DNA from: Octopus sinensis
Taxonomy: Eukaryota
Direction: 5' to 3'
Length of the DNA: 64,000 nt
Assembly (NCBI RefSeq): GCF_006345805.1
Contig: NC_043014.1
Span: forward strand, 42,470,001 to 42,534,000
The notes beneath the pieces are model-generated. The model did no database searches. It was given only the letters and a program-made list of their open reading frames with translations, and was not told the DNA's origin. Positions 5,294-7,589 of this stretch are shown here, piece by piece. Both the position numbers and the translations under genes were made by a program. Each line of letters begins with the position of its first letter. Position 1 is the first letter of the stretch.

Positions 5294-7351
5294 ACTTTTA
5301 GCATTTTTGAGAAAAACTTATATTTACAAAGTTATTTCACGTTAAAGTTGTCCTATTTTGGTAATTTCAACCAATCAATGACGTGTATTCAGCTGAATAA
5401 AATTACTGCCGTTGTTTGTCAACAACAACTATCAGCGGTGTATTTTTCATTTGTCACTGTTATTTATGACATCGTTCATGCATTTGTACTGGTTTTTAGC
5501 TTTAAGGTTTTAGGGTTAGGGTTAGGGTTAGGGTTAGGGTTTTAGGGTTAGGGTTAGGGCTTTAGGATTAGGGTTAGGGTTTTAGGGTTAGGGTTAGGGT
5601 TACGGTTTTAGGGTTAGGGTTAAGGTTTTAGGGTTAGGGTTAGGGTTAGGGTTTTAGGGTTAGGGTTAGGGTTTTAGGGTTAGGGTTAGGGTTAGGGATT
5701 TAGGGTTAGGGTGGGTTTTAGGGTTAGGGTTAGGGTTAGGGTTTATGGTTAGGGTAGGGTTTTAGGGTTAGGGTTAAGGTTTTAGGGTTAGGTTAGGGTT
5801 AAGGTTTTAGGGTTAGGGTTAGGGCTTTATGGTTAGGGTTAGGGTTTAGGGTTAGGGTTAAGGTTTTAGGGTTAGGGTTAGGGTTAGGGTTTTATGGTTA
5901 GGTGTTGGGTTAAAGTTTTAGGGTTAGGTTAGGGTTTTATGGTTAGGGTTAGGGTTTTAGGGTTAGGGTTAAGGTTTTAGGGTTAGGGTTAGGGTTAAGT
6001 TTTAGGGTTAGGGTTAGGGTTAAGGTTTTAGGGTTAGGGTTGGGTTTTAGGGTTAGGGTTAGGGTTAAGGTTTTTTGGTTAGGTTAGGTTTTAGGGTTAG
6101 GGTTAAGGTTTTGGTTAGGTTAGGGTTAAGGTTTTAGGGTTAGGGTTAGGGCTTTATGTTAGGGTTAGGGTTTTAAGGGTTAGGGTTAAGGTTTTTTAGG
6201 TTAGGGTTAGGGTTAGGGTTTTAGGGTTAGGGTTGGGGTTAAAGTTTTAGGGTTAGGGTTAGGGTTTTATGGTTAGGGTTAGGGTTTTAGGGTTAGGGTT
6301 AAGGTTTTAGGGTTAGGGTTAGGGTTAAAGTTTTAGGGTTAGGGTTAGGGTTAAGGTTTTAGGGTTAGGGTTAGGGTTTTATGGTTAGGGTTAGGGTTTT
6401 AGGGTTAGGGTTAAGGTTTTAGGGTTAGGGTTAGGGTTAGGGTTTTAGGGTTAGGGTTGGGGTTACGGTTTTAGGGTTAGGGTTAGGGTTTTATGGTTAG
6501 GGTTAGGGTTTTAGGGTTAGGGTTAAGGTTTTAGGGTTGGGGTTAGGGTTAGGGTTTTAGGGTTAGGGTTAGGGTTTTAGGGTTAGGGTTAGGGTTAGGG
6601 ATTTAGGGTTAGGGTTAGGGTTTTAGGGTTAGGGTTAGGGTTAAGGTTTTATGGTTAGGGTTAGGGTTTTAGGGTTAGGGTTAAGGTTTTAGGGTTAGGG
6701 TTAGGGTTAAGGTTTTAGGGTTAGGGTTAGGGTTTTATGGTTAGGGTTAGGGTTTTAGGGTTAGGGTTAAGGTTTTAGGGTTAGGGTTAGGGTTAGGGTT
6801 TTAGGGTTAGGGTTGGGGTTAAAGTTTTAGGGTTAGGGTTAGGGTTTTATGGTTAGGGTTAGGGTTTTAGGGTTAGGGTTAAGGTTTTAGGGTTAGGGTT
6901 AGGGTTAAAGTTTTAGGGTTAGGGTTAGGGTTAAGGTTTTAGGGTTAGGGTTAGGGTTTTATGGTTAGGGTTAGGGTTTTAGGGTTAGGGTTAAGGTTTT
7001 AGGGTTAGGGTTAGGGTGGGTTTTTTAGGGTTAGGGTTGGGGTTACGGTTTTAGGGTTAGGGTTAGGGTTTTATGGTTAGGGTTAGGGTTTTAGGGTTAG
7101 GGTTAAGGTTTTAGGGTTGGGGTTAGGGTTAAGGTTTTAGGGTTAGGGTTAGGGTTAGGGTTTTATGGTTACGGTTGTCATAAGTAACAGTGACAAACAA
7201 AAAATACACCACTGGAAGTTCTAGTTGACAAACACAGTAATAATTTTATTCAGCTGAATACATGTCATTGATTGGTTGAAATTACCGAAATAGGCCTTCT
7301 TTAACGTGAAATTACTTCATAAATATAAGTTTTCTCAAAAATGCTAAGAGT
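5294..7351. mobile_element. foldback-like element: ~175-bp inverted arms enclosing a telomere-like array
   Basis: 5294-5470 matches the reverse complement of 7177-7351 (agcatttttgagaaaaacttatattt...aatttcaaccaatcaatgac...tattcagctgaata...tttgtcactgtta). Confidence 0.85.
5503..7176 (+). repeat. interstitial telomere-like array of TTAGGG with TTTTAGGG, TTAAGG and TTTTATGG variants
   Basis: Continuous ~1.67-kb array; 580-bp higher-order duplication (ggttggggttaaagtttt at 6231 and 6811; ggttacggtt at 6461 and 7041). Confidence 0.97.
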
Positions 7352-7589
7352 AAAACATGTTTTATATGAAACATTCTACCAGTGTCTGAAATTTGAAAGT
7401 GTTCAGTTACAAAAAATTATTTTTTAAATCTGTACGTCAAAAGGTAAAGATCCCAAAAGTCTATATGATAGCTTACCTCATGGTGTCTACTGCAGAATAG
7501 CTTGTTCTAACATAACATCCGTGCTTAAGTGAGGATAAATATTACCTCTTGGTATTAATACTGCCTCTGTCTCTAATATAAAGCTTTCC

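What the first reader, a model, noticed from the sequence alone, without database searches (positions are those of the whole stretch)
5294..7425. Telomere-like array enclosed by long inverted arms: a transposon-borne interstitial telomere
Seen: the 1.67-kb TTAGGG-variant array starts ~30 bp after one ~175-bp arm and ends flush against its inverted copy. Each arm holds the perfect palindrome TATTCAGCTGAATA and a ccaatcaatgac motif. Inference: this is not a chromosome-fusion scar (no head-to-head TTAGGG/CCCTAA switch) but an array grown inside a foldback DNA element, which could spread telomere-like, G-quadruplex-prone DNA through the genome.
Basis: partly seen in the sequence, partly recalled or inferred. 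Interest (0 to 1): 0.75.

Follow-up and report, generated by a model that had tools for sequence, protein, structure and literature searches.

The report
Octopus repeat element carrying telomere-like array
A 1.66-kb telomere-like (TTAGGG-variant) satellite in an octopus genome lies between two inverted 180-bp arms of a dispersed repeat family, and a second, older copy 47 kb away carries only a short telomere-like tract at the same place, so the array most likely grew in place from a seed that the element carries.

Summary
A 1,664-bp TTAGGG-variant array (5510-7173) sits between inverted arms at 5292-5473 and 7174-7353. The arms are about 180 nt and 88% identical. There is a 37-nt gap on the left and a flush junction on the right. 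The array holds no CCCTAA.

Three new points:
- The array is not a telomerase product. It is built of 20- and 26-nt units, TT(TTAGGG)3-4, with fixed TTAAGG and TTATGG variants, and it contains a 98.9%-identical 580-bp internal duplication.
- The arms are not the element's ends. Family homology runs 105 nt beyond the right arm, to 7458.
- A second, diverged copy (53904-54328) has a short (CCCTAA)~4.5 tract on the same strand. It lies 100 nt from the conserved block, against 86 nt in copy 1. These are the only other telomere dimers in the 64 kb.

The element class is not settled. A long-TIR non-autonomous DNA element is my best guess (about 0.5). The target-site duplication evidence is weak and n = 2. 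Reverse transcription primed on telomeric DNA is the main rival. No further Octopus DNA could be reached to test the family genome-wide.

The parts
5292..5473 (+). Left arm. An inverted copy of the right arm, on the strand carrying CCAATCAATGAC and the palindrome TATTCAGCTGAATA. It lacks the outer 105 nt of the family unit.
   Evidence: 87.8% over 180 nt to 7353-7176, E = 9e-60; nhmmer profile positions 105-284 only.
5474..5509 (+). Spacer between the left arm and the array. Its last ~18 nt (TGGTTTTTAGCTTTAAGG) look like a degenerate array unit.
   Evidence: Read directly. Its similarity to the copy 2 spacer is not significant.
5510..7173 (+). Telomere-like satellite with the G-strand on +. 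Units are TT(TTAGGG)3 (20 nt) and TT(TTAGGG)4 (26 nt) with fixed TTAAGG, TTATGG and TTAAAG variants. It holds 186 perfect TTAGGG, 0 CCCTAA and 30 G-quadruplex motifs.
6199..6551 (+). First copy of a recent 580-bp-shift segmental duplication inside the array. The second copy is 6779-7131. Identity is 98.9% over 353 nt.
6779..7131 (+). Second copy of the 580-bp-shift internal duplication.
7174..7353 (-). Right arm, flush against the array. Its sense strand is the - strand, so the array reads (CCCTAA)n downstream of it.
7354..7458 (-). Outer family segment beyond the right arm. It is homologous to copy 2 but is not part of the inverted repeat. The family boundary lies at 7458 (sense strand starts TTTTGGGATCTTT).
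   Evidence: 7244-7458 vs 54121-53904, 73% over 220 nt, E = 2e-27.
53904..54121 (+). Copy 2: the outer segment plus the outer ~113 nt of the arm, including CCAATCAATGAC at 54090. This is the securely homologous part.
54122..54204 (+). Copy 2: the stretch in the position of the inner arm. Its length is similar to copy 1 but sequence similarity is not significant.
54205..54243 (+). Copy 2: short C-strand telomere-like tract CCCCACCCCTAACCCTAACCAACCCTAACCCTAAAA. Its reverse complement begins TTTTAGGGTTAGGG, like the array units of copy 1.
   Evidence: (54211-54242).
54275..54328 (-). Copy 2: candidate degenerate right arm. It consists of an inverted inner-arm piece (54275-54311) followed by an inverted copy of the family terminus (GAAAAGATCCGAACA, 54313-54328).
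   Evidence: p about 0.025; pair I4; p about 0.02-0.07. Weak.

Best explanation
The locus is one copy of a dispersed, non-coding repeat family of an Octopus genome. The family is most likely a non-autonomous DNA element with long inverted ends: about 285 nt in the ancestor, of which 180 nt survive on the left side of this copy. Its centre carries a short telomere-like microsatellite. In this copy the seed, a TTTT-prefixed run of TTAGGG hexamers, was amplified in place. Replication slippage and unequal exchange first produced 20- and 26-nt units, then ~112-nt blocks, and most recently a 580-bp block, giving a 1.66-kb satellite. Telomerase did not build the array. Shown: the anatomy, the internal higher-order structure, the second copy with a short tract at the matching position and strand, and the strong hairpin potential. 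Inferred: that the family moves as a TIR transposon, that the inverted arms are ancestral rather than a local duplication, and that hairpin formation by the arms favoured expansion of the loop.
For: Arms are 88% identical over 180 nt. The collapsed element folds as a DNA hairpin of -139 kcal/mol, z = -26.6. A second family copy is 73% identical over 220 nt, with unrelated flanks on both sides. The only other telomere dimers in the 64 kb lie in that copy, on the same strand relative to the conserved block, at 100 nt against 86 nt. My rough estimate of the chance of that placement is below 0.01. The reverse complement of the copy 2 tract starts TTTTAGGGTTAGGG, the same prefix as the copy 1 units. 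The array has recurrent unit orders (C-N-F blocks) and a 98.9%-identical 580-bp duplication, far younger than the 12% arm divergence. Copy 2's far side shows, in the expected order and orientation, an inverted inner-arm piece and an inverted terminal motif, flanked by TTACTG/TTAACTG. MITE-borne tandem repeats are a documented phenomenon, including in molluscs (PMC6947457). Octopus vulgaris carries many TIR and MITE families (PMC13282606).
Against: Only two copies could be examined. Copy 1 has no convincing target-site duplication, and its left arm stops 105 nt short of the family boundary seen on the right. The inverted arm and terminal motif in copy 2 are individually only p about 0.02-0.07. 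The inner arm half and the spacer are not significantly similar between copies. No transposase partner and no superfamily-specific termini were recognised. Both copies share a precise boundary on one side only, which a retro-copy would also produce.
Confidence: 0.5

Rival explanations
1. Reverse transcription primed on telomeric DNA. An RNA of about 285 nt that ends in CCCUAA repeats anneals to a TTAGGG 3' end at a break or an existing interstitial tract and is copied to its 5' end. That RNA could be a non-autonomous retroelement or the 5' part of the telomerase RNA itself, as in type-B TERC-ITS loci. The result is (TTAGGG)n followed flush by the antisense element.
For: The geometry fits. The array runs flush into the antisense right arm, and both copies end at the same precise outer boundary (7458 and 53904, TTTTGGRATCTTT), as expected for the 5' end of an RNA template, while the other side differs between copies. 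Type-B TERC-ITS loci have exactly this order and orientation (PMC8537989). A small hairpin (TGTCA...TGACA) sits just upstream of the tract, where template-boundary helices lie in telomerase RNAs (sequence; the comparison is from my own knowledge).
Against: The model does not explain the left arm or the inverted pieces in copy 2. There is no poly(A) tail, only CCAAAA, and no target-site duplication. No telomerase-RNA or hammerhead match appears in Rfam, even at E <= 10. Known mollusc telomerase RNAs are only 350-410 nt in total (PMC8480181) and, from my own knowledge of animal telomerase RNAs, the template lies near the 5' end, so a 285-nt leader would be unusual. TERC-ITS loci are rare (41 in 30 vertebrate genomes), so two within 49 kb would be surprising.
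Confidence: 0.2
2. Telomerase-mediated repair or healing of a break at the apex of a pre-existing palindromic element. An interstitial telomeric insertion in the sense of Nergadze and Giulotto was later amplified. On this view the telomere tract is not an ancestral part of the family.
For: Long hairpin-forming palindromes are fragile at their centre (own knowledge). The strongest pure run, 5 hexamers, lies at the left start of the array. Telomerase-inserted tracts at break sites are documented (PMC8537989).
Against: Copy 2 carries a tract at the equivalent position and strand, so two independent events would be needed at the same place in the same orientation. The present array is a higher-order satellite rather than pure hexamers.
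Confidence: 0.12
3. A local inverted duplication (fold-back repair) around an ordinary interstitial telomeric array that happened to lie next to one copy of a dispersed repeat. On this view the paired-arm architecture is not a property of the family.
For: The left arm copies only 180 of the 285 nt of the unit and ends where no family boundary exists. The evidence for a second arm in copy 2 is weak.
Against: The arms have diverged by 12%, so the duplication would be old. The weak inverted pieces in copy 2 lie in the expected order. The tract and unit are associated in both copies.
Confidence: 0.13
4. An assembly artefact: a chimeric or palindromic read, or a collapsed or expanded repeat.
For: The window comes from a scaffolded assembly, with a 100-N gap at 44509-44608. 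Array length in assemblies is often unreliable.
Against: Artefactual palindromes have near-identical arms and a palindromic centre. Here the arms are 88% identical and the centre has a single orientation. A diverged second copy exists.
Confidence: 0.05

Closest known systems
MITEs and MITE-like elements that carry internal tandem repeats. Examples are lepidopteran MITEs with hitchhiking (GTCY)n microsatellites, Xenopus Xstir/T2-MITE arrays, and bivalve MITE-like or Helentron-borne satellites (reviewed in PMC6947457).
   Same: A short non-coding element with inverted ends. A central repeat varies in length between copies and can expand into a satellite-like array. Copies are dispersed.
   Different: The passenger repeat here is the host's own telomere motif. 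The inverted ends are very long (180 to ~285 nt). The superfamily, termini and target-site duplication are not established.
TERC-ITS loci of vertebrates, type B (PMC8537989)
   Same: TTAGGG repeats are followed directly, in the same orientation, by a non-telomeric sequence that ends at a fixed point, as in the array-to-right-arm junction.
   Different: There the flank is a 25-98-nt piece of telomerase RNA and the tract is 6-205 bp. Here the flank is 285 nt, is of unknown origin, is repeated in inverted form on the other side, and the array is 1.66 kb. No telomerase-RNA match was found.
Heterochromatic or amplified interstitial telomeric sequences (het-ITS; review PMC6410037)
   Same: Degenerate telomere-like repeats are amplified by unequal exchange or slippage into arrays longer than the seed. 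Transport by mobile elements has been proposed for them.
   Different: Het-ITS are usually pericentromeric blocks of hundreds of kb without a defined carrier. Here a defined carrier unit can be seen.
Drosophila foldback (FB) elements
   Same: Long inverted ends with strong hairpin potential.
   Different: FB ends are themselves built of tandem sub-repeats. These arms are unique sequence, and the tandem array lies between them.
Endonuclease-deficient Penelope-like elements (Athena, Coprina) and the telomere-bearing elements (TBE1) of Oxytricha
   Same: Mobile elements physically linked to telomere repeats. Penelope-like elements often carry inverted partial copies.
   Different: No reverse transcriptase ORF or hammerhead ribozyme is associated. 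The location is interstitial. In TBE1 the telomere repeats lie at the outer tips of the inverted ends, whereas here they lie inside.

Membership tests
Non-autonomous TIR DNA transposon (MITE-like) | Terminal inverted repeats at both ends of the unit | tested here: inconclusive
   Copy 1 has 180-nt inverted arms, but the right side continues 105 nt further as family sequence with no partner on the left. Copy 2 has only weak inverted terminal and inner pieces (p about 0.02-0.07).
Non-autonomous TIR DNA transposon (MITE-like) | Target-site duplication of fixed length flanking the unit | tested here: inconclusive
   Copy 2 has TTACTG (53898-53903) against TTAACTG (54329-54335), an imperfect match. 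Copy 1 has none at 5291/7459. A TA...TA pair flanks the arm ends at 5293-5294 and 7351-7352, but those are not the family boundary.
Non-autonomous TIR DNA transposon (MITE-like) | Several dispersed copies with unrelated flanks | tested here: met
   Two copies lie 47 kb apart. The flanks are not similar. No more genome was available.
Non-autonomous TIR DNA transposon (MITE-like) | No coding capacity | tested here: met
   All frames of the arms are interrupted by stops. The longest open stretch is 88 codons, and an alignment query built from it and the matching frames of the other two arm copies found no homologue.
Non-autonomous TIR DNA transposon (MITE-like) | Empty (pre-insertion) sites in paralogues or related species | not testable with these tools
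   No eukaryotic genome collection was on hand. The flanks have no paralogues in the window.
Foldback (FB) elements | Inverted ends composed of tandem sub-repeats | tested here: not met
   Tandem Repeats Finder reports no array within 5292-5473 or 7174-7458.
Chromosome-fusion interstitial telomere | Head-to-head TTAGGG/CCCTAA arrays | tested here: not met
   186 TTAGGG and 0 CCCTAA in the array.
Telomerase-synthesised tract (healing or short ITS) | Uniform hexamer repeats | tested here: not met
   67% of bases lie in perfect hexamers, the longest pure run is 5 units, and the array has 20/26-nt units and a higher-order structure.
TERC-ITS | The flank matches the species' telomerase RNA | not testable with these tools
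   No cephalopod telomerase RNA appears in PMC8480181 or its supplement. Rfam gave no telomerase-RNA match at E <= 10, but to my knowledge its models do not cover molluscs.
Penelope-like retroelements | Hammerhead ribozyme in the terminal repeats and an RT ORF | tested here: not met
   No hammerhead hit was found. No RT ORF adjoins either copy.
Helitron / Helentron carriers of satellites | 5' TC and 3' CTRR ends with a subterminal hairpin | tested here: not met
   The unit ends read TTTTGG... and ...AAGTAA or ...CCAAAA in either orientation.

The most novel reading that the evidence does not exclude
The family is a mobile element that uses telomeric DNA for its own propagation. Its RNA would end in telomere-template-like CCCUAA repeats and be reverse-transcribed from TTAGGG 3' ends, possibly by telomerase itself or from a telomerase-RNA-derived ancestor. 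Each insertion would then plant a new interstitial telomere seed, and some of these seeds would grow into kilobase G-quadruplex-rich arrays across the octopus genome.
Probability: 0.15. Interest if true: 0.75.

Novelty: new variant of a known kind. Interest (0 to 1): 0.45.

Why it matters
Reviews list transport by mobile elements as a possible origin of interstitial telomeric arrays, but as a proposal rather than a demonstrated case with a defined carrier (PMC6410037). If genome-wide data confirm it, this locus pair would give a concrete carrier unit. It shows a 'seed' state of about 35 nt in copy 2 and an 'expanded' state of 1.66 kb in copy 1. Such arrays are prone to forming G-quadruplexes (30 motifs here against 0-1 in the rest of the window). 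They are also potential fragile or recombination sites and binding sites for telomere proteins, in a genome that is about two-thirds repeats. The family could also serve as a marker for how satellites are born from element-borne microsatellites in cephalopods.

Tried and rejected
1. Finding more family copies.
- Exact 20-mer scans of the metagenome, prokaryote-genome and viral collections gave only chance hits or none.
- A protein-space search with an alignment of arm translations found nothing.
- I tried to sample Octopus DNA through transposon proteins. This gave one 21-kb O. vulgaris locus with no family copy. A second protein search returned no further octopus proteins with contigs.

2. 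RNA-family searches. At gathering thresholds the whole window gave no hits. At E <= 10 around both copies there was no telomerase RNA and no hammerhead, only microRNA-like scores on the neighbouring inverted SINE-like pair.

3. Homology of the spacer and of the inner arm half between the two copies was not significant in shuffle tests.

4. Empty-site test within the window: the flanks have no paralogues.

5. Pfam did not confirm the short mariner-like and LINE-tail-like ORFs near the locus. ARAGORN found no tRNA-like heads in the SINE-like repeats.

6. I considered promoter-like motifs in the conserved block (CCAAT, TGACGT, CAGCTG, AATAAA). A perfect 20-nt run in a 220-nt alignment at 73% identity is not statistically remarkable (my estimate, p about 0.3), so I make no functional claim.

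7. I rejected a fusion scar, a pure telomerase product, a classical foldback element, a Helitron and a palindromic read artefact. The reasons are in the membership table and under the rival explanations.

Full report
**Source and setting.** The window is animal DNA of 32-44% G+C, packed with dispersed SINE-like repeats and simple repeats. A reverse-transcriptase/PHD ORF at 39131-39928 has its best named relatives in Octopus vulgaris and O. bimaculoides, so the source is an Octopus genome. A 100-N run at 44509-44608 shows that the assembly is scaffolded. That molluscs use TTAGGG telomeres is my own knowledge; I could not confirm it for Octopus in the paper library.

**The observation.** It is correct.
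- Tandem Repeats Finder reports a single array at 5510-7176 with periods 6, 20 and 26.
- The inverted-repeat finder and BLAST give arms at 5292-5473 and 7174-7353. They are 87.8% identical over 180 nt, E = 9e-60.
- The left arm is followed by a 37-nt spacer. The right arm is flush with the array.
- Each arm holds TATTCAGCTGAATA and CCAATCAATGAC.
- The array has 186 TTAGGG and no CCCTAA.
- With the array collapsed, the element folds as single-stranded DNA into one long hairpin of -139 kcal/mol, z = -26.6.

**What the array is.** It is not a run of hexamers of the kind telomerase makes.
- Only 67% of its bases lie in perfect TTAGGG, and the longest pure run is five units.
- Autocorrelation peaks at 20 and 26 nt, not 6.
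- Cutting at the TTTT junctions gives a few recurring units. These are TT(TTAGGG)3 and TT(TTAGGG)4, with fixed variants ending in TTAAGG or starting with TTTTATGG. They occur in recurring orders; the triplet I labelled C-N-F appears nine times.
- The segment 6199-6551 is repeated at 6779-7131 with 98.9% identity.
- The array therefore grew by slippage and unequal exchange of ever larger blocks. Its latest growth is much younger than the 12% divergence of the arms.

**A second copy.** BLAST and an nhmmer profile of the arms find one more homologue in the window, at 53904-54121 on the + strand. Three things follow.
- Homology with copy 1 does not stop at the outer end of the right arm (7353). 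It continues at the same level to 7458 (73% over 220 nt, E = 2e-27). The family unit is thus at least 285 nt long. Its boundary reads TTTTGGRATCTTT in both copies, and the left arm of copy 1 is a partial inverted copy of it.
- The flanks of the two copies are unrelated and have no paralogues in the window, as expected for a dispersed element.
- Copy 2 is followed on the same strand by CCCCACCCCTAACCCTAACCAACCCTAACCCTAAAA (54205-54243). These are the only telomere dimers in the 64 kb outside the big array. The first CCCTAA lies 100 nt after the conserved block, against 86 nt in copy 1, on the same strand. The reverse complement of the tract begins TTTTAGGGTTAGGG, the prefix of the copy 1 units.
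- I estimate the chance of a lone tract landing there in that orientation at below 0.01. This is a rough positional argument, not a computed test. The simplest reading is that a short telomere-like tract is an ancestral part of the unit, and that copy 1 shows its expanded state.

**Is it a foldback or TIR transposon?** The evidence is mixed.
- Downstream of its tract, copy 2 has a 37-nt match to the inner end of the arm in inverted orientation (p about 0.025 against shuffles). Directly after that comes an inverted copy of the family terminus, GAAAAGATCCGAACA against TTTTGGAATCTTTTC (p about 0.02-0.07).
- Their order and orientation are what an internally deleted second arm would give, and TTACTG/TTAACTG flank the unit so defined.
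- This hints at ancestral inverted ends of about 285 nt, with the left end truncated in copy 1 and internally deleted in copy 2.
- Each signal is weak. The inner arm half and the spacer are not significantly similar between copies. Copy 1 shows no target-site duplication at the family boundary.
- The arms contain no tandem sub-repeats, so the element is not a classical foldback element. The termini do not fit Helitrons.
- No transposase partner was identified. A mariner-like ORF remnant at 476-745 is a resemblance from memory that Pfam did not confirm.

**The main rival.** The array-to-right-arm junction has the geometry of reverse transcription primed on a TTAGGG 3' end: repeats, then flush the antisense of a sequence that ends at a fixed point in both copies. 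Type-B TERC-ITS loci of vertebrates look like this (PMC8537989). Several points weigh against it.
- It does not explain the left arm.
- There is no A-tail.
- Rfam gives no telomerase-RNA or hammerhead match.
- Known mollusc telomerase RNAs are only 350-410 nt in total (PMC8480181). From my own knowledge of animal telomerase RNAs, the template lies near the 5' end, so a 285-nt leader would be odd.
- No cephalopod telomerase RNA is available, so the idea cannot be excluded.

**Other rivals.** Telomerase healing of a break at the apex of a palindromic element would need two independent hits at the same place. A purely local inverted duplication is disfavoured by the hints in copy 2. An assembly palindrome is excluded by the 12% arm divergence and the single-orientation centre.

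**What is known.** Elements that carry and expand internal tandem repeats are well documented, including in molluscs (PMC6947457). Octopus vulgaris has many TIR, MITE, Helitron and Penelope families (PMC13282606). [quoted passage not shown] I found no description of an element family with an internal telomere-motif passenger in six literature searches. That is absence of evidence in one library only.

**Verdict.** The best reading (about 0.5) is a long-inverted-end, non-autonomous element family with a telomere-like central microsatellite that expanded in place in this copy. I rate it a new variant of a known kind, of moderate interest. The interest would rise if the priming-on-telomere reading (about 0.15-0.2) proved true. 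The main limitation is that every family-level statement rests on two copies within one 64-kb window. All attempts to reach more Octopus DNA failed.

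Noticed in passing
window 4901-5074 and 5093-5266: Immediately left of the left arm, two copies of the common SINE-like repeat sit head-to-head (174 nt, 91% complementary, 18-nt loop). They form a second strong hairpin, and Rfam scores it weakly as various microRNA precursors. The right-hand copy is cut short at about 5275 compared with the ~400-nt copy at 4675-5065.
   Followed up: partly
window 24426-24559: A perfect tandem array of a 17-mer (CGTTAGGAAGGGCATGG, 7.9 copies, 100% matches). The motif is part of a dispersed repeat seen elsewhere in the window, so this looks like another element-borne repeat that expanded recently.
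   Followed up: no
window 61011-61935; 29092-29871; 30178-30836: Tandem arrays with long units: 255 nt x 3.6 at 96% identity, 184 nt x 4.3, and 234 nt x 2.8. They are built from pieces of dispersed repeats.
   Followed up: no
window 44509-44608: A run of 100 N, which is a scaffold gap. The window therefore comes from a scaffolded assembly.
   Followed up: yes
window 38536-39928 (+): A LINE-type reverse-transcriptase remnant with a PHD finger (Pfam RVT_1 and PHD). Its closest named relatives are in Octopus vulgaris and O. bimaculoides. I used it to identify the source organism.
   Followed up: yes
window 476-745 (+) and 7539-7820 (+): Two short ORF remnants. One resembles the C-terminus of a mariner transposase (YSPDLAP.DFHLF). 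The other resembles the C-terminal zinc knuckle of a LINE ORF2 (C..C...IGL.SH) and lies just right of the element. Both resemblances are from memory, and Pfam gave no hit.
   Followed up: partly
window 8680-9328 and 12383-13031: Long, imperfect trinucleotide arrays ((TCA)n, (CAC)n, (TAG)n, (GTG)n) of 200-375 bp lie close to the element. They create long, low-complexity pseudo-ORFs.
   Followed up: no
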